A DNA stretch of 64,000 bases from Macrostomum lignano (Eukaryota). The stretch spans positions 124,001 through 188,000 of the forward strand of contig NIVC01001256.1 in assembly GCA_002269645.1 (NCBI GenBank). The letters run 5' to 3'. The notes below the pieces were generated by a model. It was not told where the DNA came from. It did no database searches and worked only from the letters and a program-made list of their open reading frames with translations. Of this stretch, positions 7,117 to 63,100 are shown piece by piece (position 1 is the first letter of the stretch; every line of letters starts with the position of its first letter). A program made the position numbers and the translations under genes.

Positions 7117-23977
<16,861 letters not shown>

Positions 23978-31773: not shown

Positions 31774-32810
31774 GGGGGATTTGTAGCCTAGTGTTAAGTG
31801 GTAAGTCGCTGACTGCGCCGGCAGCTCAACCCCCTGGCCAGTTGCAACTCTGTCAGGCTGAAGTGGATCCCAGGGCACGCAGGGTTTCCGGGGAACGAGT
31901 TGGCAGACACCCTCGCCAAGAGGGGTGGCTCTGGCTCCTTCCTAGGCCCTGCTCCCCTGGTCCCTATCCCTTCTACGGTCATCAATCGTCAGATCGATGA
32001 CTGGGCTGATTCCCTTCACAGGGACAGATGGGCGGGCGCCCAGAACTGCTGGCAATCACGTCCTGCGGTTCCGTGCCCCTCTCGCAGGCTCAGGAACATC
32101 TTTCGGAACCAAAACCGGAAGGTTTAAAAACCTTTACCGGCCATGGCTACCTCGCTAGACACTGCTTCCTCCCTTCCTCCGAGGAGACCTCGAGAGTGAA
32201 CTTTGCCCTTTTTGCGAGTACGGTAATGAAGATGCTCAGCACTTTGTCTGTCACTGCCCTTTCTTTACCATGCAGAGACCGGCTACGCTACCTCGGACCG
32301 AACCCGTCCATTGACGAGGTCTGCCAGCCCGACAGCATCCCACGGCTCATCCAGTTCCTTCGGGCGACAAGACGAGCGACTTTCTTCCCCACGGAAGATC
32401 ACGCTGCAGGACGGACCGGCGGACCACCCTGACCGGCCCCACGCCTCTGCCTGTCTGCGGGGCTTTAGGGGCTGGCGGAATGGGCGACCCTGCAGCTAGT
32501 CAAGTCAAGTAATTCAAGTGGTAAGATCGCCAGACTCACAACTGAAGGTCGAGGGTTCGATTCTCGACACATTCAGAACAATCTGTGTGCATGAGCAAGA
32601 CACTTAACTCTGCATTCTTTCACTTCACCCAGCTGTAAAATGGGTGCCAGCATTAGCTGGGGTAATAGAGGGTGTGTGGCGACCCCCAGTCCTTGGAATA
32701 AAAAGCTGTAGGCAGCCTTCAGATGCATTGCGCAATAGCCCCGGCTGAGCACATGTGGGTTGCACATGTGGCCCAATTGGGGCAGGTGTAATCAATCATT
32801 ATTATTATTT
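31774..32810 (+). mobile_element. tRNA-derived SINE (Nin/Deu-like core), split by a LINE insertion
   Basis: Head ggggatttgtagcctagtg..gtggtaag, B-box ggttcgattc near 32554, core tgagcaagacacttaactc..cacccagctgtaaaatgggt, (att)n tail near 32800. The core family assignment is from memory only. Confidence 0.6.
31806..32515 (+). mobile_element. 5'-truncated non-LTR retrotransposon (RNase H plus CCHC C-terminus)
   Basis: LASCNSVRLKWIPGHAGFPGNELADTLAKRG (RNase HI), TGHGYLARH, CPFCEYGNEDAQHFVCHCP, (tcaag)n tail; flanked by duplicated aagtggtaag at 31796-31805 and 32516-32525. Confidence 0.85.
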
Positions 32811-36699: not shown

Positions 36700-37400
36700 C
36701 TATCCGTAGTCGAAAGAATGTGCGAGACTTTTGCAGGCATCCAGTCTTAAAAGAAGCATGTGTGACATTGCTATGCCCCGAAGGCTCAAGTCAAAGGTTT
36801 TGGGGGAAGCAGGCGAGGAATTCAAGATGTTTCCAGAGCTGGTTGACGGTGCAAAAAGGGGTGACGAGGGCATCGTGGGAGAAGCGAGTGGAACCATCCC
36901 GGAGGGAGGGCCGCGGAGTTGGTGATTTTTAACAGACGGATCAGGCAAAATGGAGTCAAGTGTGTCACGTGGAGTTGTAGAGAGGAACTCTTTGGGTGGC
37001 AACAGCAGGTTAACTGCACGTGCAGCTCCATGGTGGTAGGTGGGTGGGTGAGCGACTGGTGCATCACGACCCAGTGGATAATGCCCGGTCACACGGACAT
37101 CCATGGCAACAAAAGAGCGGACGAGTTGGCAAAGATGGCAACTCAGCTGGACCAGAGCACGACCGCGGAGACACTTTAGAGACCGCTCGAAGCCTAACAA
37201 TCCGGTCGGTGTACAGTAGTAAGATTGAGTACCCCGACGCTGGCAGAAGGATTACAACGCTGTTGGAGCAGCTGCGTAGGCACAAAATACTGGCGGCAGA
37301 ATGTCGGGTTAGAGCCGAGAGCAGTGTGTGACAACTGCGGCTGATGGGACGGCCTTAGAAAGCGCCTGCCCGATGCAGTCGCTGGCTGATTTGAACAAAG
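36700..37400 (+). mobile_element. Decayed non-LTR RNase H region
   Basis: Broken IF(T)DGS motif near 36920 and QWIMPGHTDIHGNKRADELAKMA; multiple frameshifts. Confidence 0.6.
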
Positions 37401-41336: not shown

Positions 41337-41802
41337 CGCGCGAAAGGCCCCGATGCGAGTGGGTGTCCTGAATCAAATTCCACCAAAGCTCCGTTCTCTA
41401 AACGTTTCCCAAAGAGGCAGCCTTGCACCTGTCCGGTGCACAGGTTGTTGTACAAGTGTATCGATTTGTATTCTAACAAAATACAACTTGAGTACTCCAG
41501 CCATGTGAACTCCAGGTCTCCATGGTCTCTCCAAGATAATCGCATCAAATAAAAAATAAATTGAACATCATTTTTTGTTCGGCCGGGCAAAGTCAATTAA
41601 AAAAAACAAAGCAAGACTTTTTATCATTCCTATGTTGCCACGCGTTAAAATACTCGAAGTAATTTGTTTTCAACATATTAAGCGAAAGATACCACAGAAA
41701 CTGCGTTATGCGGCAAAAGTGACCGCATATGAATTCTTTGTCATCAGCTTAGCCGCATCTCGCCTCTCCACCTGCCGCTCCGCCTGCCGCTCCACCTGCC
41801 GC

Positions 41803-43372
41803 TAGTAGCTGATAGCTGGTAGCTGGTAGCTGGTAGCTGGTAGCTGGTAGCTGGTGGCTGGTAGCTGGTAGCCGATAGCTGGTAGCTAGTAGCTGGTAGC
41901 TGATAGCTGGTAGCTGATAGCTGGTAGCTGGTTGCTGGTAGCTGGTAGCTGGTAGCTGATAGCTGGTAGCTGGTAGCTGATAGCAGGTAGCTGATAGCTG
42001 GTAGCTGGTAGCTGGTAGCTGGTAGCTGATAGCTGGTAGCTGATAGCTGGTAGCTGGTAGCTGGTAGCTTATAGCTGGTAGCTGGTAGCTGATAGCCGAT
42101 AGCTGGTAGCTGATAGCTGGTAGCTGGTAGCTGGTAGCTGATAGCCGATAGCTGGTAGCTGATAGCTGGTAGCTGGTAGCTGATAGCTGATAGCTGGTAG
42201 CTGATAGCTGGTAGCTGGTAGCTGGTAGCTGATAGCTGGTAGCTGGTAGCTGGGTAGCTGGTAGCTGGTAGCTGGGTAGCTGGTAGCTGGTAGCTGGGTA
42301 GCTGGTAGCTGATAGCCGATAGCTGGTAGCTGATAGCCGATAGCTGGTAGCTAGTAGCTGGGTAGCTGGTAGCTGGTAGCTGATAGCCGATAGCTGATAG
42401 CCGATAGCTGGTAGCTGGGTAGCTGGTAGCTGATAGCCGATAGCTGGTAGCTGATAGCTGGTAGCTGGTAGCTGGTAGCTGGTAGCTGATAGCCGATAGC
42501 TGGTAGCTGATAGCTGGTAGCTGGTAGCTGATAGCTGGTAGCTGGTAGCTGGTAGCTGATAGCCGATAGCTGGTAGCTGGTAGCTGGGTAGCTGGTAGCT
42601 GGGTAGCTGGTAGCTGATAGCCGATAGCTGATAGCCGATAGCTGGTAGCTGGTAGCTGGGTAGCTGCTAGCTGCTAGCTGATAGCCGATAGCTGGTAGCT
42701 GATAGCCGATAGCTGGTAGCTGGTAGCTGGGTAGCTGGTAGCTGCTAGCTGATAGCCGATAGCTGGTAGCTGATAGCCGATAGCTGGTAGCTGGTAGCTG
42801 GTAGCTGATAACCGATAGCTGGTAGCTGATAGCCGATAGCTGGTAGCTGATAGCCGATAGCTGGTAGCTGGTAGCTGGTAGCTGATAACCGATAGCTGGT
42901 AGCTGATAGCCGATAGCTGGTAGCTGGTAGCTGGTAGCTGATAACCGATAGCTGGTAGCTGATAGCCGATAGCTGGTAGCTGATAGCTGGTAGCTGGTAG
43001 CTGGTAGCTTATAGCTGGTAGCTGGTAGCTGATAGCCGATAGCTCGTAGCTGGTAGCTGGGTAGCTGGTAGCTGCTAGCTGATAGCAGGTAGCTGATAGC
43101 CGATAGCTGGTAGCTGGTAGCTGGTAGCTGGGTAGCTGGTAGCTGCTAGCTGATAGCCGATAGCTGGTAGCTGATAGCCGATAGCTGGTAGCTGGTAGCT
43201 GGGTAGCTGGTAGCTGGGTAGCTGGTAGCTGATAGCCGATAGCTGGTAGCTGATAGCCGATAGCTGGTAGCTGATAGCGGGTAGCTGATAGCCGATAAGC
43301 CGATAGCTGGTAGCTGATAGCGGGTAGCTGATAGCCGATAAGCCGATAGCTGGTAGCTGTTAGCTGTTAGCA
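41803..43372. repeat. 7-bp tagctgg/tagctga/tagccga repeat
   Basis: Direct reading. Confidence 0.96.
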
Positions 43373-43986: not shown

Positions 43987-44741
43987 GCTGATTGAAGTAT
44001 TCCGGCTGTCTGTAGATGAGGCTTGGAGGAGTCTGCAATTGCTGGCTTGGTCCGCTAAGCAGTGCGGACTAAGCAGTGCTAAGCGGCGCATTTATGCACT
44101 CAAAACTGACACGTTTTTCCGGTTCGAAGGATCGACGCGCACTGCTGAGCTGCGGGCCGCACGTGAGCAAAGAACGAAGCGCTCTGACCCGCTCAGGACA
44201 AATATTTCAAACTACTGTATAGAATTCCGGCACACAGTCCCCGTTGTTTGTTAAAGGCTGCCTGACAAGATGCCACAGTGTCCTTTGTGCGAACTGTCAA
44301 TATTGACAACAGTTTCAGGGTGCCCTTTGCTATTTATCATTTCTTACAGTGCATTTGCTTGCTTTGCTTAGATTAAGCAATCCAAAGCAGCAGACACAAA
44401 AAGATGAGAAGTAATTTACGAGCGTACATAGTCTGTAATCTCAAATGTTTCACATTCCATTTGATGATGATGATGATCCTCATCATCCTCAGATGATGAT
44501 CATCATCATCCTCAGCTTCTTGAGCACTGCAGCGTAGCTCGCTGAACGCAAACTTCGACAAAGACTTGATGGAGCAGATCTCAGACTGTCACGTCAGCTG
44601 CTTGACGCCCCTCAAATGTTTTCTACTCACAGAATATTTGGAATCTTAAACCTCTCAAACCCTTTCATCAAGTCATGGCTTCGAGAAGACCTGCTTCCAG
44701 ACAGGCCCTGCTTGCTGAAAGGCGCAGACTTAGTCTTGACT

Positions 44742-46021
44742 CGGACATCCGATACAAGCTCTGATTCGGACACGGATACAAGCTCTGATTCGGACACGGA
44801 TACAAGCTCTGATTCGGACACGGATACAAGCTCTGATTCGGACACGGATACAAGCTCTGATTCGGACACGGACACAAGCTCTGATTCGGACACGGACACA
44901 AGCTCTGATTCGGACACGGACACAAGCTCTGATTCGGACACGGACACAAGCTCTGATTCGGACACGGACACAAGCTCTGATTCGGACACGGATACAAGCT
45001 CTGATTCGGACACGGATACAAGCTCTGATTCGGACACGGACACAAGCTCTGATTCGGACACGGATACAAGCTCTGATTCGGACACGGATGCACAAGCTCT
45101 GATTCGGACACGGATACAAGCTCTGATTCGGACACGGACACAAGCTCTGATTCCGACACGGATACAAGCTCTGATTCGGACACGGACACAAGCTCTGATT
45201 CGGACATGGATACAAGCTCTGATTCGGACACGGACACAAGCTCTGATTCCGACACGGATACAAGCTCTGATTCGGACACGGACACAAGCTCTGATTCGGA
45301 CACGGACACAAGCTCTGATTCGGACATGGATACAAGCTCTGATTCGGACACGGACACAAGCTCTGATTCCGACACGGATACAAGCTCTGATTCGGACACG
45401 GACACAAGCTCTGATTCCGACACGGATACAAGCTCTGATTCGGACACGGACACAAGCTCTGATTCGGACACGGATACAAGCTCTGATTCGGACACGGATA
45501 CAAGCTCTGATTCGGACACGGATACAAGCTCTGATTCGGACACGGATACAAGCTCTGATTCGGACACGGATACAAGCTGATTCGGACACGGATACAAGCT
45601 CTGATTCGGACACGGACACAAGCTCTGATTCGGACACGGATACAAGCTCTGATTCGGACACGGATACACAAGCTCTGATTCGGACACGGACACAAGCTCT
45701 GATTCGGACACGGATACAAGCTCTGATTCGGACACGGACACAAGCTCTGATTCGGACCCGGATACAAGCTCTGATTCGGACACGGACACAAGCTCTGATT
45801 CGGACACGGATACAAGCTCTGATTCGGACACGGACACAAGCTCTGATTCGGACCCGGATACAAGCTCTGATTCGGACACGGATACCAGCTCTGATTCGGA
45901 CACGGATACAAGCTCTGATTCGGACACGGATACAAGCTCTGATTCGGACACGGATACCAGCTCTGATTCGGACACGGATACAAGCTCTGATTCGGACACG
46001 GATACAAGCTCTGATTCGGAC
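44742..46021. repeat. 24-bp minisatellite gacacggatacaagctctgattcg
   Basis: Period 24 with three 2-nt indels. Confidence 0.97.
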
Positions 46022-46287: not shown

Positions 46288-48810
46288 TCAGGTAGCCACT
46301 GCCGCCACCAGTCGCGTCTGCAGCAGGGCGGCCACGTGCATCGACAGCGGAACGTCCGGCGGGCTTCCACCGAGCAGCAGGTAGACGCGGCGCCGACGAC
46401 GGTCGAAAGCGGCCACGCAGGCGAGGGCGTAATCGGACACGGATTTGGCCGGCGGCGCCTGCCGAGACCAGCCGTCCGAGGCTGCGTCATCGAGGGAGGC
46501 GGTCTGCAAATTCCGGGTAGGGTTGGCGAATACCGACACTGAAATCCCGAATACCGACACTGAAATCCCGAATATCGACACTGAAATCTCGAATTCCGAC
46601 ACTGAAATCCCGAATACCGACACTGAAATCCCGAATACCGACACTGAAATCCCGAATACCGACACTGAAATCCCGAATACCGACACTGAAATCCCGAATA
46701 CCGACACTGAAATCCCGAATACCGACACTGAAATCCCGAATACCGACACTGAAATCCTGAATACCGACACTGAAATTCCGAATTCCGACACTGAAATCCC
46801 GAATACCGACACTGAAATCCCGACTACCGACACTGAAATCTCGACTACCGACACTGAAATCCCGAATACCGACACTGAAATCCCGACTACCGACACTGAA
46901 ATCCCGACTACCGACACCGAAATCAAGAATACCGACACTAAAATCAAGAATACCGACACTGAAATCCCGAATATCGACACTGAAATCAAGAATACCGACA
47001 CTGAAATCCCGAATATCGACACTGAAATCTCGAATTCCGACACTGAAATCCCGAATACCGACACTGAAATCCCGAATACCGACACTGAAATCCCGAATAC
47101 CGACACTGAAATCCCGAATACCGACACTGAAATCCCGAATACCAACACTGAAATCCTGAATACCGACACTGAAATTCCGAATTCCGACACTGAAATCCCG
47201 AATACCGACACTGAAATCCCGACTACCGACACTGAAATCTCGACTACCGACACTGAAATCCCGAATACCGACACTGAAATCCCGACTACCGACACTGAAA
47301 TCCCGACTACCGACACTGAAATCCCGACTACCGACACCGAAATCAAGAATACCGACACTAAAATCAAGAATACCGACACCTGGGAGGCACCTTTCCTCAG
47401 ATTAAGGATTACCAGAATGCCATTGGGATCTTTCGCAAGATTTTCGGGGTGGGGAATTCCACTGTTAGGGACACAGCCTATACGATCGGATTTCTCATCC
47501 TCTGAACCGGCAGTCACGTGACAAACTTTAAATAAGATGACGGCGCCGGGCACCAGCTGGTCGGGGATCCGTAGAGGCAGGTAGCGCATTGGATTTTCGA
47601 CAGCGTCGCGAAAGGCTGCCCAATCGATGCTTGGCGGAGGCGGCGGCGGCGGAGGCGGAGGCGGAGGTGGCGCCGGTAGGGGAGGCGCTTGTCTTGCTGG
47701 CTGGCGCCGCTGCTTCCGTGGCGATGGCGCAGCGGCCACTGGCGCGTCGGCTTGCGAGCCGCCCTGGCAGATCCGCGCGTCGGCTTGCGAGCCGCCCTGG
47801 CAGATCCGGGCCAGCTGCCGCTGCTGCTGTTCAAGCAGGGCGCCGAGGCGCTGGAACTGGCGCTCGTTGTCTGCCCGCATCGACTGCAGCAGGCCGAACA
47901 GCTGGGCCAGCTGACTGGCCTCGGCTGGGCTGGCGGGCGCGGCGATGGGAGCCGCGGCCACCGCCTCCCTGGCAGCCGTCGCTCTGCGGAACGAAGAATT
48001 CCCAGCCTCCGTAGGAGCGGCAAGCGTGCGATTTGAACTATAATCAGCGTCCTTAGCAACCTCCTTAGCAACGTTCTTAGCCGCATCTGATTGATTGCAC
48101 AGCCGGCCCGAGTCCCTGGCAACATTGCGCCGATCCGCAGGCTGGCAGAAGGCCAGGCAGTCCGGGTGGCTCAGCAGACTTTTGCCGGCCAGCGCTGCCG
48201 CGTTCGCCTCGTTGCATTCGAGCAGCGCCGAGCAGCTGGACGCTTCGTTGTATTCCAGCTGGCGCCGCTTCTCGGCCGCCTCTCGGCGACGCTTTGGCGA
48301 CGGCCCGGCAACGACGGCAACGCCGGCGGCGTCCACAGTGACGCAGCCGCGACGCTTCAAGCCGCGCCGCTGGTCGCCAAGCCGCTGAAATGCGGCGGCG
48401 TCGCCAAACGGCGCGTCGGCGTCGGCCTCGCGCGCCTCACCATCAGAGTCGAACTCCAGCCGGCGCGGCGGCTGCCAGGCGACACCGACTGGAAGAGCCA
48501 ACTTGCGCGGCGGCCGGCCGAGGCGGGGCAGCGACCCAACCTGCGGCGACGCTGCTGTTGTTGACGACTCGGGCACCAACGACGATGCGTTTGCCGCCGC
48601 TGCTGCCGTAGCCTTCCGCTTGACCCGGCGTCTTCGACGTCGACTACGCCGACGCGGCGACTCGTCGACGGCGGCGCTGCTCGTCGCGGCCGGCGTCGGC
48701 GCGGAAGTGACGGTGGCGGAGGACGGCGCGCCGACTTGGCGCCGCTCTATCGGAGCAGCTGTCGGCGGCTCGCTCTCGGAGTCGTCGCTGTCGGTGGCGA
48801 CTTTCTGCGT
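46288..48810 (-). CDS. Low-complexity nuclear protein with a coilin-type Tudor-like C-terminus (about 500 aa); start codon not found in the genome
   Basis: Exon 48810-47527 after ttttttccag|, exon 46503-46288. Joined C-terminus YLPLRIPDQLVPGAVILFK|TASL..SVSDYALACVAAFD...VYLLL..LLQTRLV recalls coilin LP.....VG.KIAFK..VSDY..RL. Basic NLS RRRSRRRRRRVKRK. The coilin N-terminal domain is not seen. Confidence 0.62.
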   Translation of the reverse strand, partial: TQKVATDSDDSESEPPTAAPIERRQVGAPSSATVTSAPTPAATSSAAVDESPRRRSRRRRRRVKRKATAAAAANASSLVPESSTTAASPQVGSLPRLGRPPRKLALPVGVAWQPPRRLEFDSDGEAREADADAPFGDAAAFQRLGDQRRGLKRRGCVTVDAAGVAVVAGPSPKRRREAAEKRRQLEYNEASSCSALLECNEANAAALAGKSLLSHPDCLAFCQPADRRNVARDSGRLCNQSDAAKNVAKEVAKDADYSSNRTLAAPTEAGNSSFRRATAAREAVAAAPIAAPASPAEASQLAQLFGLLQSMRADNERQFQRLGALLEQQQRQLARICQGGSQADARICQGGSQADAPVAAAPSPRKQRRQPARQAPPLPAPPPPPPPPPPPPPSIDWAAFRDAVENPMRYLPLRIPDQLVPGAVILFKVCHVTAGSEDEKSDRIGCVPNSGIPHPENLAKDPNGILVILNLRKGASQVSVFLILVSVFLISVSVVGISVSVVGISVSVVGISVSVFGISVSVVEISVSVVGISVSVFGISVSEFGISVSVFRISVLVFGISVSVFGISVSVFGISVSVFGISVSVFGISVSEFEISVSIFGISVSVFLISVSIFGISVSVFLILVSVFLISVSVVGISVSVVGISVSVFGISVSVVEISVSVVGISVSVFGISVSEFGISVSVFRISVSVFGISVSVFGISVSVFGISVSVFGISVSVFGISVSVFGISVSVFGISVSEFEISVSIFGISVSVFGISVSVFANPTRNLQTASLDDAASDGWSRQAPPAKSVSDYALACVAAFDRRRRRVYLLLGGSPPDVPLSMHVAALLQTRLVAAVAT
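46531..47379. repeat. 21-bp minisatellite accgacactgaaatcccgaat with a higher-order duplication
   Basis: The order of variant units recurs at about 420 bp spacing. Confidence 0.95.
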
Positions 48811-49265
48811 CTGGAAAAAATGAGGCGAATAGAAATGAAATGCGGAATAGAAGCGATAGATACTACTGCACCAGAGTTTCAGTAGTGTGCTAAAGAAATC
48901 AGTCGTAAAAAGAATTCCTGCATAAATTAAGCAGCTATTTAATAAAGAATCCAGACAGTGTATTTACACAGAGCCATGGTAGAAATAGAAAACAGTCAAC
49001 CGCAACAGATAAAAAGGTGTCAGACGTGGAGAATTCATTAAAATTGATAGGCCACACAATATTATGAAAAAACAAGTTGTGAGTTTGCAGTTTAAATAGC
49101 TACAAGAAAAATTTGGCAATGGCCCCAACCTCAACCTTGGCGCTCTCTGATTGGCTGCGGCCCGCATTGATAAGTTCGTGCACCGGAATGCTAAGCAACA
49201 GAAACAAATAAACAAAGAGTTCAATCCACCAAAAATTGACAGAGTTTTACGGCTCGTAGCAGCCA

Positions 49266-52569
<3,304 letters not shown>

Positions 52570-53349
52570 CTGTCAGAAAAGTACATTGAGTTTTTACACC
52601 CTTCTTGCATTTTTCCAGCTGATATCGAAAATTTTATGGTAATAACCTGACTTATATACTTTTAGTAGGCTAATAAATGAAAAATAAGAAATCTCGCATA
52701 CTCTCGAAATTACCATTTTAAATAAACAAATTAATGCTAACAACCCTACTTTTCTGCTAATAGTAGCCAAAATAGTTTTTGGTGTTTGTTTCTCATTCGG
52801 CACCATTTCACTAACAGATGCTAATTTACAGCCCCGGCTGGCCCCACCAGGGATGACTAACAAGATCTATAGGGTGAAGTCAGCTATTTCACCTGGGTAC
52901 TGCAGGGCTCAATGTGAGGTAGGCGCCCCAAAAAAACAAAAACTTTGCACACTTTCAGCAATGAATTTTTCAGAGCGAAACAAAAAAGAATCAATTTTGG
53001 TTAAATTTCTCATAATATATTGTGATTAAAAAATGGATATTTTGTTTATCTGGAACAGCTACGCTCGTAAATAAAATTTTACGCATACGATTTCTAAAGA
53101 ACGTATGCTGATAAAATTACTTTACAATATAACAATTAGCTTAATAAATAATAATTAGACATAATAAAATCACAACACCATACAGAGAGACAGCAGATGT
53201 GTGTGGGAGAAATGTTATGGAGGAGGGCCTACTAGCATATTTTAAAGCTTTATTTTGACCAACCAGATTTTATGGGACTGCTCTGCTGCGGAGGAACGAG
53301 CCTCAACTGAGCATTGGCTCGCTATGCGACTGTGCACTCCTACAGCGTA

Positions 53350-55223: not shown

Positions 55224-57074
55224 TCACTTCGGCTCAGCCTGTGGCACACCTTGCGATCGGTGAAAGTGCACATTGATCCACTTGGAGTCGCGGCGGCACC
55301 AGACCCGGGTCTCCTCCGACTGCCGGCTGCGCGGATTGTTGGACCTGGGGCGGGATTGATTGCGATATTAGCTGGTGGCCTACTACTGTCAGTAGCGTGT
55401 TGCGATATTAGCTGGTGGCCTACTACTGTCAGTAGCGTGTTGCGATATTAGCTGGTGGCCTACTACTGTCAGTAGCGTGTTGCGATATTAGCTGCTGGCC
55501 TACTACTGTCAGTAGCGAGTTGCGATATTAGCTGGTGGCCTACTACTGTCAGTAGCGTGTTGCGATATTAGCTGCTGGCCTACTACTGTCAGTAGCGAGT
55601 TGCGATATTAGCTGCTGGCCTACTACTGTCAGTAGTGAGTTGCGATATTAGCTGCTGGCCTACTACTGTCAGTAGTGAGTTGCGATATTAGCTGCTGGCC
55701 TACTACTGTCAGTAATGATAGGGTCTTATGAAATGCGGCTCTCACTTGTCGAGAAACTGGGTCAGCCGTATGTAAGCAATGCAGGCGGAATCCTCACTCA
55801 GCAGGTGCACAGTCGGGTTCAGAATGCTGGTGTGCACCGCCTTGCTGCTGTTCTTGCCTGCGGGTAGGAGAGAGGGGGTTTGTCTACCTGTCTGATACCT
55901 GCCCTGTCCACCTGTCTGATACCTGCCCTGTCTACCTGTCTGATACCTGCCCTGTCCACCTGTCTGATACCTGTCCTGTCCGCCTGTCTGATACCTCCCC
56001 TGTCCACCTGTCTGATACCTGCCCTGTCCACCTGTCTGATACCTGCCCTGTCCACCTGTCTGATACCTGCCCTGTCCACCTGTCTGATACCTGCCCTGTC
56101 CACCTGTCTGATTCCTGCCCTGTCTACCTGTCTGATACCTGCCCTGTCTACCTGTTTGATACCTGCCCTGTCCACCTGTCTGATACCTGCCCTGTCCACC
56201 TGTCTGATACCTGTCCTGTCCGCCTGTCTGATACCTGCCCTGTCCACCTGTCTGATACCTGCCCTGTCTACCTGTCTGATACCTGCCCTGTCCACCTGTT
56301 TGATACCTGCCCTGTCCCCATGTCTGATACCTGCCCTGTCCACCTGTCTGATACCTGCCCTATGCGCAGTCCAATCCCTGTTGTTCACCTGTCCGATCCC
56401 TGTCCAATCCCTATTCCCCTGTCCAATCCCTATTCCCTTGTCCAATCCCTATTCCCCTGTCCAATCCCTATCCCCCTGTTCGATCCCTTTCCGATCCCTA
56501 TCCATTAGTCCTGGCTAATCTCACCGTGGTCAAAGTAGAACTTGTGAAAGTCCAAGCCTTCAATAAGGTTGCCGAACGCCTCAGGCTCGAACGCAGTAAT
56601 CTGGGGGTCCGACAACTTTCTGCAAGGCAGAGCAGAGTGCGGCGGTGGTGCGGAACAAGCTGGTGATTTAGCAGCCGAGCATCAAATCTGCACTCACGAA
56701 TAAGTGTCAAAGTCGCTGCTGGCGATGGCCTGCAGCAGCTGCTCGGTGACCTTGATAATCTCCTGCTTCCGAGCTGCAAAGAGTTTGATGAGCAGGGAGC
56801 TTTATGCTCAGATACTCAGCAAATTGGATTGCTAGACTATTCGCAGTCTTATAAACAGTTCTGGCTTAAATTTAAATAAATCGCTAGCCATCTACATAAC
56901 AGATGCAGTCAGTGAGAACTGAACACAGTTAGATAGGCTCAGTGAAATTTCCAATTGGAAATGGCATGCAACATTCACAATGCGAGACTTCTAAAGAGTT
57001 TTTTTTGGCTTTCAAAAACAGTTTATTTATCTATCGGGCCCATCTTGACAACCACGGGGATTCACTGCCTGCTA

Positions 57075-57130
<56 letters not shown>

Positions 57131-60100
57131 CCTCTCATGTACCGCCTTAAACCTTGTATTATCACGACAGCACAGTAATAGCAATTATATAATAGGGGCT
57201 ATTATTAATAAAATTCGCTACAAAAGACGCTTGTTTTGCTACAACAAAAGCGGAGCAGAAGTGGCAAACAAAATCCAAGGACGGAAAGAAAACTCGATGG
57301 CTGCTAAGGGGGGCGGCGGAGCAAAATAGCTGGGAGGGGGGGGGGCTGAGGGCGCGTCACAAGAAGAGGCAGGCGGCGCGGGTTTGCGCGGCGCCAAAAC
57401 TGGAAGGTAAAATTTGATTCGGGAGGCGGCGACGCTGGCGGCTTGGGGATTCCAGGCGAACGGAGCGGCCGTTCCAGAGTGAGTGAATGGAGGCTGGATG
57501 AGGAAGCTGGCAGACACACAGACAAATACAGAAAGACACAAACAGTCGGGAAGACAGACAGGCACGGAAAGACACAGACACAAAGGCAGACAGGAAGACG
57601 CAGACAGGCATATAGAGAGACGCGGAAAGACACAGGACACAAGCAGACACAGGAAGACACAAACAGACACGGGAGGACACAAACAGAAAAGGAAAGACAC
57701 AAACAGACACAGGAGGACACAAACAGAAAAGGAAAGACACAAACAGACACAGGAAGAGACAAAACAGACAGACACGGGAGGACACAAACAGGCACGGGAA
57801 GACACAGGCAGACACACAGGCAGACACAAACAGGCAGACACAAACAGACACACAGGCAGACACACAGGCAGACACACAGGCAGACACAAACAGACACAAA
57901 CAGACACAGACAGACACACAGACAGACACACAGACAGACACAGACAGACACACAGGCAGACACAAACAGACACACAGGCAGACACAAACAGACACACAGG
58001 CAGACACAGACAGACACACAGACAGACACACAGACAGACACAAACAGACACACAGGCAGACACAAACAGACACACAGGCAGACACAGACAGACATACATG
58101 CAGACACAAACAGACACACAGGCAGACACAGACACACAGGCAGACACAAACAGACACACAGGCATACACAGACAGACACAAACAGACACACAGACAGACA
58201 CAGACAGACACACAGGCAGACACAAACAGGCAGACACAAACAGACACACAGGCAGACACAAACAGACACAGACAGACACACAAGCAGACACAAAGCCATC
58301 CAATCCCAGAAGCCAGTTGCACAGTGCGGCGTGAAAAGAAGGCAAATAAATGGATTGCCGGATGCAGTGAAAACAAAGCCGGACAGCACAGCGGTGCCCG
58401 GACCGCAGTGCACTAGCAGGCAGGGGCTGAGGGGGGGGGGCAGGACTCACTCTCATTACCGCCACCGCCACCGGCACAGACGTCAGACTTGACAACGGTG
58501 CCAGAAGAAGTCAGTGTGGCGTTAAAGCAGTTGACGGCTGGAAAAAATTGTTAGAAAAAAACACTAAATTTTTCAATCCGAAGATTTTAGCCCGGCGTGT
58601 ATGAAGGCGGCCGGACAGAAATGGCTGCTTCAGCTTGAGAATAAAAAATCGCCGTCTCCAGAAAAGAGAACGCCAAAAAGAGAGGCATTCTGTTGAAGCA
58701 AGCAGGTGCAGCTACCGCACAGCGGTGTCAAGCGAGAGGAGCAGACCGCTCACAGCGTGTGAAACGCGTGAGCAGACAACAGGTAAAACACAGGAGAAGC
58801 TCTATAGCCTGCAAAGCCACACTGATGATTTCATTTGCAGCATCAATCAAGTCCGCCGTGACCCAAGCGACAAAAGTCAAGTTCTTTCGCCCTCACTGTC
58901 AGTTTATCAATCATTTCAGCAATCAGATGCTGCAATCAATAAAATTTCCTACACAAAGGTTAACAATACATCCGATTAGCAAACACTAATGATATTTTAA
59001 TCAGCAATCTTGGAAAGCTAAATTTAGAAATGATTAAAAATGCTGAATGTGGCCGACTCCGGACTCACCTTTGGCTTCCTCGGCCTCCTCAATGGTGGTG
59101 GCGCCGCTGTCTGCCGATTCGCGAATCCCATTGCCGGAGGCCTTCTTGGCGGCCGTGACCACCTTGCTGGCGCTGCTGGCTGCAGGGGCGGGGGTTGTGG
59201 GATCCAGCATTAGCGGGGTGCCGTCACTTGATAATTAATTAATGCTTATTGACAGGCGTGCGTGGATAATCATTAAAGTAAGCAATTAAAAAGATCTTTA
59301 ATTTAATGCATTTATAGCAGCCCTAATTAGCTAACACTTTCGGAGAGACTAATAATACCATGTGGCAACAGATTCTTTTGATGACGTGGCTGGTTAAGGT
59401 GGCTAATATGAAGGAGAGGAGTAGCGAGAGGAGAACGGGGTGATAGGCAAATAGAGGTTGGAGAAGTCAAAGGCGGAGGGTCGAGGGAGACAAGGAGAGG
59501 ACAGAGAGACAGGGAGAGGACAGAGAGAGGACAGAGAGACAGGGGGAGGACAGAGAGACAGGGAGAGGACAGAGGGAGACAGGGAGAGGAAAGGGAGAGG
59601 ACAGAGAGACAGGGGGAGGACAGAGAGACAGGGAGAGGACAGAGAGACAGGGGGAGGACAGAGAGACAGGGAGAGGACAGAGGGAGACAGGGAGAGAACA
59701 GGAGACAGGGAGAGGAAAGGGAGAGGACAGAGAGACAGGGAGAGAACAGGAGACAGGGAGAGGAAAGGGAGAGGACAGAGAGACAGGGAGAGAACAGGAG
59801 ACAGGGAGAGGAAAGGGAGAGGACAGAGAGACAGGGGGAGGACAGAGAGACAGGGAGAAGACAGAGAGACAGGGGGAGGACAGAGAGACAGGGAGAGGAC
59901 AGGGAGACAGGGAGACAAGGAGAAGACAGAGGGAGACAGGGAGAGAACAGGAGACAGGGAGAGGAAAGGGAGAGGACAGAGAGACAGGGGGAGGACAGAG
60001 AGACAGGGAGAGGACAGAGAGACAGGGAGAGGACAGAGAGACAGGGGGAGGACAGAGAGACAGGGAGAGGACAGAGAGACAGGGAGACAAGGAGAAGACA

Positions 60101-63100
60101 GAGGGAGACAGGGAGAGAACAGGAGACAGGGAGAGGAAAGGGAGAGGACAGAGAGACAGGGGAGGACAGAGAGACAGGGAGAGGACAGAGAGACAGGGGG
60201 AGGACAGAGAGACAGGGAGAGGACAGAGGGAGACAGGGAGAGGAAAGGGAGAGGACAGAGAGACAGGGGGAGGACAGAGAGACAGGGAGAGGACAGAGAG
60301 ACAGGGGGAGGACAGAGAGACAGGGAGAGGACAGAGAGACAGGGGGAGGACAGAGAGACAGGGAGAGGACAGAGACGGAGAGGACAGAGAGACAGGGAGA
60401 GGACAGGGAGACAGGGAGACAAGGAGAAGACAGAGAGAGAGACAGGGAGAGGACAGAGAGAGACAGGGAGAGGACAGAGAGAGACAAGGAGAAGACAGAG
60501 AAAGACAAGGAGAAGACAGAGGGAGAGACAGGGAGAGGACAGAGAGAGACAGGGAGAGGACAGAGAGAGACAAGGAGAAGACAGAGGGAGACAGGTGGAG
60601 GACAGAGGGTAGACAGAAAGGGGCAGAGAGCAGAGAAGAGGGGAGAAAAGATTGCGAACAATCTTGAATAGCATGGGATAGTACCCGTACATGCACATGG
60701 GAAATCTTAGGCATAGCAATACACTTGTATCGCACTAATATAGTTAATATAAAAACGGCGGCCTACCTGAGACGGCTGCCATAGAAGAGAAGCAAGAATA
60801 AAAATGCCTACAGGATTAGCCCTGAGAGACCTGGGGCAGAGTTTTGTACAAAAATAGAATGAAGGCAAATCTGGACGGTGTTAAAAGAAAAAATTGTCTG
60901 CGAGACCCTGTCTGACAGGCCGAAGAAATTCGAGCCGCCAATGGAGCGAATGGATTGACCCCCCCCCTATGGGATTATAGCGACTCCTCATTCCCTTCAC
61001 CGCCACCCCTGCCTTCAGGCTCAGTGCTGACAGGCGTGGGAACCGCACAGTCGACTCCAACAGAGTCGGCATGTGACTCCTGCTGGCCCAATAGTCTAGT
61101 AGCGAGCGTGAACACTACTAGTGGCGAGTGTGAACAGTGAACACTGCTAGCAACAAGTGTGAACCTCCTAGTAGTGTGAACCCCACTAGTAGCGTTTCAA
61201 CCCTCCTAGCCAATGGTATTAGCCTCCTAGTAAAGAGTGTGAATCCCTCAGTAAAGAGCGTGAATCCCCCAGTAAATAATGTGAATCCCTCAGTAAATAG
61301 TGTGAAACCCCCCGTAAAGAGTGTGAATCCCTCAGTAAATAGTGTGAATCCCCCAATAAAGAGTGTGAATCACCTAGTAAAATAGTGTGAATCACCTAGT
61401 AAAGAGTGTGAATCCCTCAGTAAGGAGTGTGAATCCCCCAAAAAAGAGTGTGAATCCCCAGTAAAGAGTGTGAATCACCTAGTAAGAGTGTGAATCCCTC
61501 AGTAAAGAGTGCGAATCCCCCAATAAAGAGTGTAAATCCCCAGTAAAGAGTGTGAATCATCTAGTAAAGAGTGTGAATCACCTAGTAAGAGTGTGAATCC
61601 CCTAGTAAAGAGTGTGAATCCCTGAGTAAATAGTGTGAATCCCCCAATAAAGAGTGTGAATCACCTAGTAAGAGTGTGAATCCCCTAGTAAAGAGTGTGA
61701 ATCCCTCAGTAAATAGTGTGAATCCCCCAAAAAAGAGTGTAAATCCCCAGTAAAGAGTGTGAATCATCTAGTAAAGAGTGTGAATCACCTAGTAAGAGTG
61801 TGAATCCCCTAGTAAAGAGTGTGAATCCCTCAAAAAAGAGTGTGAATCCCCAGTAAAGAGTGTGAATCCCCTAGTAAGAGTGTGAATTCCCTAGTAAAGA
61901 GTGTGAATCCCCTAGTAAGAGTGTGAATCCCCTAGTAAGAGTGTGAATCCCCTAGTACTCGTAAGAGTGTGAATCACCTAGTAAAGAGTGTGAATCCCTG
62001 AGTAAATAGTGTGAATCCCCCAATAAAGAGTGTGAATCACCTAGTAAGAGTGTGAATCACCTAGTAAAGAGTGAATCCCTCATTAAATAGTGTGAATCCC
62101 TCAAAAAAGAGTGTGAATCCCCAGTGAAGAGTGTGAATCACCTAGTAAAGAGTGTGAATCCCCTAGTAAGAGTGTGAATCCCCTAGTAAAGAGTGTGAAT
62201 CCATCAGTTAAGAATGCGTCCAGTTACTACAGAAGCAACTTCAAGAGAAAATAATTTATAAGAAATTAGAAATTATGGGCAGCAAGTGACAAGAATAGCA
62301 AATGTTAATAATTTAAAGAGAATTATTATATGCAATACAAACATTATTTGACGGCGAAGCAAGAAATTAAGAATAAAAAGAAAATTTTACAAGTGGAGCG
62401 CAATGACCAATACACGAGAGACAGTAGCCTTCAGTTGCAGAGGAATTACCAACCAATACGGGTACAATGTTAGAGTAAGCCATTAAGTTTATTCAGAGTG
62501 AAAGCTAAGTGTAAAATTATGCACAGTTAACTTAGAAATAGCTGCATATTACTTCATAGTGGAATAAACGGTTAAGAAATCAATAAAATATTGAATTATT
62601 AAAATATATCAAGCATTGACACAGACGGCGGCTCGTACTTACACTTGTTCACTGCGCAGCGGGGAGGGCGGGTGATGCTCAATGAGAGTGCGATTACAAA
62701 TAGTGAAATTCCCAAAATAGCCGCTGCACTGATCCCCAGATCTGCATGCCATTGTTGCTGTGCAGTTAAAATTTCTTCGATTATAAGATTTCCAATTATT
62801 CAGCAGGTGAGGCTCGAGATCTCAAAGGCAAAGTGAAGCGCCATGCATCCAGAATTTGGCTGGCCTACACTGACTACTGGTTCTAATTTATAATTCATCT
62901 CCATGACCGTTGCCTAGGCAACCAAATGACTGTCTGTCTGTCTGTCTGTTCCATCTGTGTGTCTGTCTGTCTGTCTGTCTGTCTGTTCCATCTGTGTGTC
63001 TGTCTGTCTGTCTGTCTGTTCCATCTGTGTGTCTGTCTGTCTGTCTGTCTGTGTGTCTGTCTGTGTGTCTGTCTGTCTGTGTGCCTGTCTGTCTGTCTGT

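What the first reader, a model, noticed from the sequence alone, without database searches (positions are those of the whole stretch)
48780..49270. Gene with no genomic start codon: candidate spliced-leader-donated AUG in an operon-like pair
Seen: the coilin-like ORF begins right after a strong acceptor (tttcatttctattcgcctcattttttccag|ACG CAG AAA) in phase 0, with no in-frame Met for hundreds of codons. The upstream same-strand JmjC gene stops only about 455 nt away, and I found no phase-0 ATG-bearing donor exon in the gap. Established: flatworm spliced leaders end in AUG, which can act as the initiator (shown in Schistosoma), and trans-splicing resolves polycistronic transcripts. Inference: SL-AUG plus ACG gives M-T-Q-K-V in frame. 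This depends on the organism being a flatworm.
Basis: partly seen in the sequence, partly recalled or inferred. Interest (0 to 1): 0.7.

Follow-up and report, generated by a model that had tools for sequence, protein, structure and literature searches.

The report
Flatworm gene started by spliced-leader AUG
In this Macrostomum lignano (flatworm) locus a fast-evolving orphan gene has no start codon of its own and most likely gets its AUG from the trans-spliced leader RNA, a mechanism already known in flatworms, so the case is real but ordinary.

Summary
On the minus strand a strong 3' splice site (ttttttccag|ACG, 48811|48810) opens a 428-codon exon. Its first in-frame Met is codon 311. The same-strand JmjC gene stops 455 nt upstream.

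The window is Macrostomum lignano, record NIVC01001256.1. The M. lignano spliced leader ends in ATG. The deposited annotation, whose gene boundaries were set with SL-containing reads, starts this CDS with a non-Met codon directly after an AG. In the window's own record that is acgcag|AAA (48804). In a homeologous copy it is ccag|ACG. Both sites put the SL AUG in frame.

Three homeologous copies show the exon is coding in this frame. Indels are multiples of 3, differences sit mainly at third codon positions, and dN/dS is about 0.3-0.4. The gap carries frameshifting indels.

Caveats:
- No SL reads could be inspected.
- A formal cis alternative exists: ACCATGG at 48977, seven codons, then a weak phase-0 donor GTCTGG.
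- A 136-nt invariant CCAAT/TATA-like block in the gap may be an independent promoter, so "operon" is unproven.
- "Coilin-like" is unsupported.

The mechanism has been known since 2006, so novelty is low.

The parts
49266..49430 (-). Last exon of the upstream JmjC/Cupin_8 gene. It carries an EF-hand-like motif and the C-terminal RDEL. The stop TGA is at 49268-49266.
   Evidence: It is 98% identical to the C-terminus of PAA65260.1 (P0001).
48811..49265 (-). 455-nt non-coding gap. It is the JmjC 3' UTR plus the intercistronic region or outron of the downstream gene. GC content is 39%.
   Evidence: Indels of 1, 2 and 6 nt among three homeologous copies. No GT[AG]AG donor. No SL sequence, Rfam hit or stable RNA fold.
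49081..49216 (-). 136-nt block invariant in all three copies. It contains a CCAAT box (GCCAATCAG, CCAAT at 49154-49150) and TATTTAAA (49098-49091). It is a candidate internal promoter or intercistronic element.
   Evidence: 10.5% of the other gap columns vary, and P for such a run is about 1e-3 or less. Sequence.
48957..48977 (-). Rival cis mini-exon candidate. ATG in the context ACCATGG, seven codons (MALCKYT), then the phase-0 weak donor ACT|GTCTGG.
   Evidence: It is conserved in three copies. The same donor type (ATG|GTCTGT) is used by JmjC exon 3. The deposited CDS does not use it.
48938..48943 (-). ATTAAA, a candidate poly(A) signal for the JmjC mRNA, 133 nt before the acceptor. It reads ATGAAA in copy L001.
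48811..48827 (-). Polypyrimidine tract and first 3' splice site, cgcctcattttttccag|. The proposed SL trans-splice acceptor.
   Evidence: It matches the motif [T/C]TNCAG (PMC8629364). The annotated CDS of homeolog L002 starts at the next base.
48805..48810 (-). ACGCAG, a second in-frame AG 6 nt downstream that forms a tandem acceptor. The CDS in the window's own GenBank record starts at 48804 (AAA).
47527..48810 (-). Exon 1 of the orphan gene: 428 codons, with no Met before codon 311. It is Arg/Ala/Pro-rich with an RRRSRRRRRRVKRK stretch and a 33-nt coding repeat.
46504..47526 (-). Intron, donor AAA|GTTTGT. It contains a 21-nt tandem repeat array at 46527-47379.
   Evidence: Indels of 8 nt and 1 nt against L001 directly after the donor. 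Tandem repeats. The splice ILFK|... is seen in UniRef A0A1I8HW05.
46288..46503 (-). Last exon, ending at the stop TGA at 46290-46288. An alternative acceptor cggcag|GCG at 46458 is used by the UniRef model.
   Evidence: 426 + 71 = 497 aa matches the annotated product length.

Best explanation
The downstream gene is a lineage-restricted, largely disordered protein of about 500 aa. It has no initiation codon in the genome. Its pre-mRNA is SL trans-spliced at the tandem acceptors ttttttccag|ACG (48811|48810) and acgcag|AAA (48805|48804). The 35-nt M. lignano spliced leader ends in AUG. Both junctions are phase 0, so that AUG becomes the initiator and gives M-TQKVATD... or M-KVATD....

Shown here: the organism, the SL sequence (from the literature), the coding frame, the absence of any usable genomic AUG, and the annotated CDS starts.

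Inferred: that SL reads map to these sites, and that ribosomes start at the SL AUG.

Unresolved: whether the pre-mRNA is a JmjC-orphan polycistron or starts at a promoter inside the gap. I put this at roughly 50:50.
For: Organism and spliced leader:
- The JmjC exons are 97% identical to M. lignano PAA65260.1.
- The window is 100% identical over 12 kb to NIVC01001256.1.
- The SL is CGGTCTCTTACTGCGAAGACTCAATTTATTGCATG. About 30% of genes are SL-spliced. The trans-acceptor motif is [T/C]TNCAG (PMC8629364).
- All flatworm SLs end in ATG and can initiate. More than 40 S. mansoni cDNAs need it (PMC12582326; PMC9851317, both citing Cheng et al. 2006).

Annotation:
- Gene boundaries in the Mlig_3_7 annotation were cut at SL-read peaks (PMC5730564).
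- The deposited CDS starts at AAA after acgcag in the window's own record (497 aa) and at ACG after ttttttccag in homeolog L002 (499 aa).
- The listed coordinates are CDS extents.

Coding frame:
- 340-355 aligned codons carry no frameshifting indel. Coding indels are 99, 6 and 3 nt.
- Differences by codon position are 8/3/16, 6/4/9 and 6/1/19.
- Synonymous against non-synonymous codon counts are 10/12, 7/8 and 14/10, on 275 and 745 sites.

No other usable AUG:
- No in-frame AUG lies in the 51 (20 in L001) open codons upstream of the acceptor.
- In the conceptual mRNA the SL AUG opens 500 codons. The next AUGs, at nt 403, 629, 721 and 760, are out of frame.
- There is no GT[AG]AG donor in the gap.
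Against: - No RNA read, cDNA or peptide was seen here. The annotated starts are indirect evidence and are precise only to within 2 nt.
- Copy L001 carries no annotated gene here.
- A conserved ATG in perfect Kozak context with a phase-0 GT donor lies 146 nt upstream. Weak donors (GTCTGT, GTTTGT) are demonstrably used in this locus.
- Flatworm acceptors are often shared between cis- and trans-splicing (PMC12582326).
- The second acceptor, ACGCAG, does not fit the published motif.
Confidence: 0.78

Rival explanations
1. The gene has its own promoter (CCAAT at 49154, TATTTAAA at 49098, TSS near 49070). A cis-spliced first exon supplies the start: ATG 48977 (ACCATGG), GCT CTG TGT AAA TAC ACT, donor |GTCTGG, a 146-nt intron, then the same acceptor. 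The product would be MALCKYT-TQKV.... This could also coexist with trans-splicing at the shared acceptor.
For: - ATG 48977, its ACCATGG context and the phase-0 GT are conserved in all three copies.
- The only substitution in the 21 nt (TGT to TGC in L001) is synonymous.
- JmjC exon 3 uses the donor ATG|GTCTGT and this gene's own intron uses AAA|GTTTGT, so weak donors work here.
- A 136-nt invariant block with CCAAT and TATA-like motifs lies just upstream.
- Sharing of acceptors between cis- and trans-splicing is reported in flatworms (PMC12582326).
Against: - The deposited CDS in two copies begins at the acceptor with a non-Met residue. A transcript model containing this exon would have yielded a complete ORF starting MALCKYT.
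- The donor scores -5.2 on a generic donor matrix of my own and lacks the GT[AG]AG found in 65% of M. lignano donors.
- Four of the five ATGs in the gap have some phase-0 GT by chance, so a formal candidate is expected.
- The surrounding region is about 90-95% identical anyway, so conservation says little.
Confidence: 0.12
2. Translation starts inside exon 1, at the first genomic in-frame AUG (codon 311, 47880-47878) or at a non-AUG codon. The long upstream open frame would then be an untranslated leader.
For: An in-frame Met exists at codon 311 in all copies. L001 and L002 also have one at codon 79.
Against: - Codons 1-310 show third-position-biased divergence and no frameshifting indels.
- A stop-free frame this long arose in 1 of 2000 shuffles.
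- Four out-of-frame AUGs precede codon 311 in the mRNA.
- The Met at codon 79 is absent from the window copy.
Confidence: 0.04
3. The locus is not a functional protein-coding gene. It would be a decaying duplicate or a non-coding transcript with an accidental GC-rich open frame.
For: - No homologue outside M. lignano among 1.84 billion representative proteins, and no Pfam domain.
- The sequence is low-complexity.
- Copy L001 is unannotated.
- The adjacent JmjC copy in this window carries a 1-nt frameshift.
Against: - The frame is preserved in three copies, including across a variable 33-nt repeat.
- dN/dS is about 0.3-0.4.
- A spliced protein model exists independently in UniProt (A0A1I8HW05).
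Confidence: 0.04

Closest known systems
[quoted passage not shown] 2006, J Biol Chem 281:733; cited in PMC12582326 and PMC9851317)
   Same: The flatworm SL ends in AUG. The acceptor is in phase 0 with the main ORF. There is no genomic in-frame AUG at the 5' end. The predicted protein is Met plus the exon-encoded sequence.
   Different: This is a free-living macrostomid, not a trematode. Use of the SL Met is not shown experimentally for this gene. There are two in-frame acceptors 6 nt apart.
[quoted passage not shown] 2017 (PMC5730564)
   Same: The genes are adjacent on the same strand. The distance is under 1 kb: 455 nt from stop codon to acceptor, or about 110-130 nt if ATTAAA 48943 is the poly(A) signal. 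The downstream gene starts at a [T/C]TNCAG acceptor.
   Different: Co-transcription was not seen here. A 136-nt invariant CCAAT/TATA-like block lies between the genes. The 5' ends of the upstream gene are heterogeneous.
Caenorhabditis elegans operons resolved by SL2 trans-splicing
   Same: Short intercistronic spacing, with an acceptor lacking a matching upstream donor.
   Different: The nematode SLs do not end in AUG and do not supply the start codon. M. lignano has a single SL.
   Same: There is only a loose resemblance, recalled from memory. It consists of a long disordered basic middle region and a C-terminal '...G-x-ILFK ... VSDY...' stretch.
   Different: No Coilin N-terminal or Tudor-like domain was detected by Pfam. 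There is no PDB relative. The structure model was unusable, with pLDDT 39.

Membership tests
SL-donated initiator AUG (flatworm type) | The organism has an SL RNA whose exon ends in AUG. | tested here: met
   The window is M. lignano NIVC01001256.1. The SL ends ...TTGCATG (PMC8629364; PMC10468722).
SL-donated initiator AUG (flatworm type) | The 5' end of the mature mRNA lies at a 3' splice site with no matching cis donor. | tested here: met
   The annotated CDS starts directly after an AG in two copies. The acceptor fits [T/C]TNCAG. There is no GT[AG]AG in the gap. A weak cis donor candidate remains.
SL-donated initiator AUG (flatworm type) | SL-containing reads or cDNA are joined at this acceptor. 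| not testable with these tools
   No RNA-seq was available. No mention was found in paper supplements.
SL-donated initiator AUG (flatworm type) | The SL AUG is in frame with the main ORF and no other usable AUG exists. | tested here: met
   Both acceptors are phase 0. The ORF from the SL AUG is 500 codons. The next in-frame AUG is codon 311, after four out-of-frame AUGs.
SL-donated initiator AUG (flatworm type) | The protein N-terminus begins with the SL-encoded Met. | not testable with these tools
   This needs N-terminal proteomics or ribosome profiling.
SL-resolved operon (M. lignano criteria, PMC8629364) | Adjacent same-strand genes less than 1 kb apart, with the downstream gene SL trans-spliced. 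| tested here: met
   455 nt from stop codon to acceptor, and the same strand. Trans-splicing of the downstream gene is inferred as above.
SL-resolved operon (M. lignano criteria, PMC8629364) | One pre-mRNA spans both genes and there is no promoter between them. | tested here: inconclusive
   No transcript data were available. The gene numbers g1, g3 and g6 under one transcriptional-unit prefix hint at multi-gene units. Against this, an invariant CCAAT/TATA-like block lies in the gap.
Coilin | Coilin N-terminal self-association domain. | tested here: not met
   No Pfam hit at E<=10 on the N-terminal 340 aa. The gap cannot encode it, because it carries frameshifting indels and stops.
Coilin | C-terminal Tudor-like domain. 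| tested here: not met
   No Pfam or PDB sequence hit. The AlphaFold2 single-sequence model had pLDDT 39 and was unusable for fold search.

The most novel reading that the evidence does not exclude
Two consecutive same-strand genes depend entirely on trans-splicing for their start codons. They are the ER-type JmjC hydroxylase, whose three annotated copies are all 5'-partial with no genomic AUG, and the orphan gene. The orphan uses tandem in-frame acceptors to make two N-termini. A 136-nt invariant intergenic element acts as an internal promoter or as a processing element within a flatworm operon. Protein output would then be gated at the trans-splicing step and not at transcription alone.
Probability: 0.15. 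Interest if true: 0.45.

Novelty: new member of a known kind. Interest (0 to 1): 0.25.

Why it matters
The case shows that gene finders that demand a genomic ATG will truncate or drop such genes in flatworm genomes. One copy of this gene is unannotated and the others are deposited as 5'-partial.

For M. lignano, a transgenic model, it offers a compact natural test case. It has a 455-nt gap, one acceptor region and no other AUG. It could be used to measure how often the SL Met is used, and to ask whether short same-strand gene pairs are true operons or carry internal promoters.

It does not change what is known about the mechanism.

Tried and rejected
- Two word-index protein searches with the orphan protein, plain and with low-complexity runs masked, returned nothing. 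The 8000-candidate list was saturated. This absence is uninformative, because the UniRef fragment A0A1I8HW05 exists.
- The full HMMER scan of 1.84 billion representatives found only that fragment and one spurious proline-rich hit.
- P0104 is not on record in the contig index.
- I searched the supplements of three M. lignano papers for the gene prefix Mlig019308 and found nothing.
- The SL sequence is not in the window.
- There are no Rfam hits in the window or in the gap.
- The invariant block does not fold better than shuffles, z = +1.3.
- Coilin tests (Pfam, PDB, AlphaFold2) were all negative or unusable.
- I rejected the cis exon ATG 49038...TCT|GTGTAA. In L001 the ATG reads AAG and a 1-nt deletion shifts the frame.
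- I rejected the longer first exon ending CTG|GTAATC at 47410, because 8-nt and 1-nt indels follow 47527.
Full report
**Observation**

The feature is on the minus strand. The sequence tttcatttctattcgcctcattttttccag|ACG CAG AAA lies at 48840..48811|48810. From ACG the frame stays open for 428 codons, to a donor AAA|GTTTGT at 47527|47526. The first in-frame Met is codon 311.

The upstream same-strand gene has Cupin_8/JmjC and EF-hand matches and ends ...ARERDEL-TGA at 49268-49266. The gap is therefore 455 nt. These parts of the finding are correct.

A stop-free frame this long appeared in 1 of 2000 shuffles of the 69% GC exon.

**Organism and locus**

The JmjC exons are 97% identical to 'hypothetical protein BOX15_Mlig019308g6, partial [Macrostomum lignano]'. 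Three annotated copies of this gene exist in assembly GCA_002269645.1. Fetching their loci showed that L003 (NIVC01001256.1) is 100% identical to the window over 12 kb. Record coordinate equals window coordinate plus 124000.

L001 (NIVC01001670.1) and L002 (NIVC01001548.1) are homeologous copies, about 94-96% identical. So the window comes from a flatworm, and two diverged copies are available for comparison.

**Gene model and coding evidence**

Against L001, exon 1 has no frameshifting indel. Its only length differences are 99 nt (three units of a 33-nt coding repeat) and 6 nt, and the last exon differs by 3 nt. Directly after AAA|GT there are 8-nt and 1-nt indels, which marks the intron.

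A UniProt model from the older ML2 assembly (A0A1I8HW05, 156 aa) independently shows the splice ILFK|APPAKSVSDY. The GenBank product length of 497 aa fits the acceptor ttgcag|ACC at 46504|46503 (426 + 71 codons).

Over 340 aligned codons the three pairwise comparisons give differences by codon position of 8/3/16, 6/4/9 and 6/1/19. Synonymous against non-synonymous codon counts are 10/12, 7/8 and 14/10, on about 275 synonymous and 745 non-synonymous sites. That puts dN/dS at roughly 0.3-0.4. The frame that begins at the acceptor is therefore a real coding frame under moderate constraint.

The protein has no Pfam domain and no relatives outside M. lignano among 1.84 billion representatives.

**The 5' end**

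The literature gives a single M. lignano spliced leader, CGGTCTCTTACTGCGAAGACTCAATTTATTGCATG. About 30% of genes are trans-spliced. The top motif at trans-splice acceptors is [T/C]TNCAG, and GT[G/A]AG occurs at about 65% of cis donors (PMC8629364). The acceptor here, TTCCAG, fits that motif.

The Mlig_3_7 annotation cut transcriptional units at peaks of SL-containing reads, using the TBONE pipeline, and then called ORFs with TransDecoder (PMC5730564). In that deposited annotation:
- the CDS of this gene in the window's own record runs 48804..46288 (497 aa) and starts at AAA directly after acgcAG;
- in L002 the CDS starts at ACG directly after ttttttccAG (499 aa);
- the listed coordinates are CDS extents, since another gene in L001 runs from ATG to TAG.

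From my knowledge of TransDecoder, a CDS whose first residue is not Met and which begins at a splice acceptor means the transcript model itself begins there, to within 2 nt. That is what an SL-trimmed 5' end looks like. Two copies give two starts, each right after one AG of CAG|ACGCAG|AAA. This points to tandem acceptors 6 nt apart, both in phase 0.

Joining the SL to the exons gives a 500-codon ORF from the SL AUG, in the context uugcAUGa. The next AUGs, at mRNA nt 403, 629, 721 and 760, are out of frame, and the next in-frame AUG is at nt 966. The in-frame extension upstream of the acceptor contains no Met in any copy. It is 51 codons long in the window and L002, and 20 in L001, where a 1-nt indel and a stop intervene.

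Flatworm SLs all end in AUG, and this AUG has been shown to initiate translation. More than 40 S. mansoni cDNAs require it (Cheng et al. 2006, as cited in PMC12582326, and PMC9851317). For Macrostomum the terminal ATG is noted as the likely start codon (PMC10468722).

**Rival: a cis exon**

I enumerated every ATG in the gap and every GT or GC at a codon boundary before its stop.

- ATG 49038...TCT|GTGTAA is refuted by L001. There the ATG reads AAG and a 1-nt deletion follows.
- ATG 48977 remains. It sits in ACCATGG and is followed by seven codons (MALCKYT) and ACT|GTCTGG. All of this is conserved in the three copies.

The donor is weak, but real donors in this locus include ATG|GTCTGT (JmjC exon 3) and AAA|GTTTGT (this gene). 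Against it, a transcript model containing this exon would have produced a complete ORF, whereas the deposited CDSs start at the acceptor. Four of the five gap ATGs have some phase-0 GT, so a formal candidate is expected by chance. I give it about 0.12. It may also coexist with trans-splicing, since shared cis/trans acceptors are common in flatworms.

**Operon or own promoter**

By the published distance rule (under 1 kb, downstream gene SL-spliced) the pair counts as an operon. If ATTAAA at 48943 is the JmjC poly(A) signal, the spacing to the acceptor is about 110-130 nt. That is near the reported mode of about 100 bp. In L001, however, that hexamer reads ATGAAA.

The JmjC copies are numbered g1, g3 and g6 under one transcriptional-unit prefix, which hints at multi-gene units.

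On the other hand, the gap holds a 136-nt block (49216..49081) that is invariant in all three copies. By comparison, 10.5% of the other gap columns vary and 3.5% of exon-1 columns vary. The block contains GCCAATCAG (CCAAT 49154-49150) and, 56 nt downstream, TATTTAAA (49098-49091). It has no Rfam match and folds no better than shuffles. It may be an internal promoter, in which case about 260 nt would be removed as an outron. It may instead be a 3' UTR or intercistronic element. This point is unresolved.

**'Coilin-like'**

Pfam at E<=10, a PDB sequence search and a single-sequence AlphaFold2 model (pLDDT 39) gave nothing. No coilin N-terminal domain can be encoded in the gap. The label should be dropped. 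The gene is best described as a Macrostomum-restricted, basic, low-complexity protein.

**Verdict**

It agrees with the public, SL-read-guided annotation of this very record. The mechanism and its occurrence in flatworms are established knowledge, so this is one more member of a known kind and interest is low to moderate. What remains open is direct RNA and protein evidence, the cis mini-exon alternative, and whether the pair is co-transcribed.

Noticed in passing
window 52373-52570 (-); L001 and L002 around 10001: The upstream JmjC gene also has no genomic start codon in its first-exon frame. All three GenBank copies are 'partial', with three different CDS starts: after gacag|GC, after cggag|ACG, and at cttg|GCG. 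The SL AUG would be in frame only at cggag|ACG (52550|52549). That gives [17 protein letters not shown] plus a hydrophobic stretch, a signal peptide placed as in mollusc orthologues.
   Followed up: partly
window about 50841-50847 (-): The window's JmjC copy has one extra C in a C-run relative to both homeologs. This shifts the frame and explains the truncated 343-aa annotated product PAA70242.1 (ends ...LCGPA). It could be a real frameshift or a homopolymer assembly error.
   Followed up: partly
window 49081-49216: A 136-nt intergenic block is identical in three homeologous copies and is more conserved than the flanking coding exons. It carries a CCAAT box and a TATA-like TATTTAAA 56 nt apart. 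There is no RNA-structure signal.
   Followed up: partly
window 47742-47808 (-); L001 about 15640-15830; L002 about 16060-16500: A 33-nt in-frame coding repeat (ARICQGGSQAD) varies in copy number between homeologs: 2 units in the window, 5 in L001 and about 13 in L002. The 499-aa product annotated on L002 implies that about 10 units were skipped in that gene model.
   Followed up: partly
window 46527-47379, 49534-50038, 50225-50754, 51189-51478, 44737-46021, 41801-43371: Introns and intergenic DNA are packed with long tandem arrays, with periods of 21, 14, 34-36, 4, 24 and 7 nt. These create many spurious long ORFs on both strands.
   Followed up: no
window 55224-62537 (-): A CaMKII-type kinase gene (Pkinase plus CaMKII_AD, from the annotation of the same record) lies upstream on the same strand. 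That makes three consecutive same-strand genes.
   Followed up: no
window 31813-32124 (+) and 36865-37176 (+): Retroelement remnants. One ORF fragment matches RNase H (Pfam E = 7e-7). A second has an RNase H-like ...GHTDIHGNKRADELAK motif with no significant hit.
   Followed up: no
window 46458 against 46503 (-): There are two alternative 3' splice sites for the last exon. ttgcag|ACC fits the GenBank product length and cggcag|GCG is used by UniProt A0A1I8HW05. They are 45 nt apart and both in frame.
   Followed up: partly
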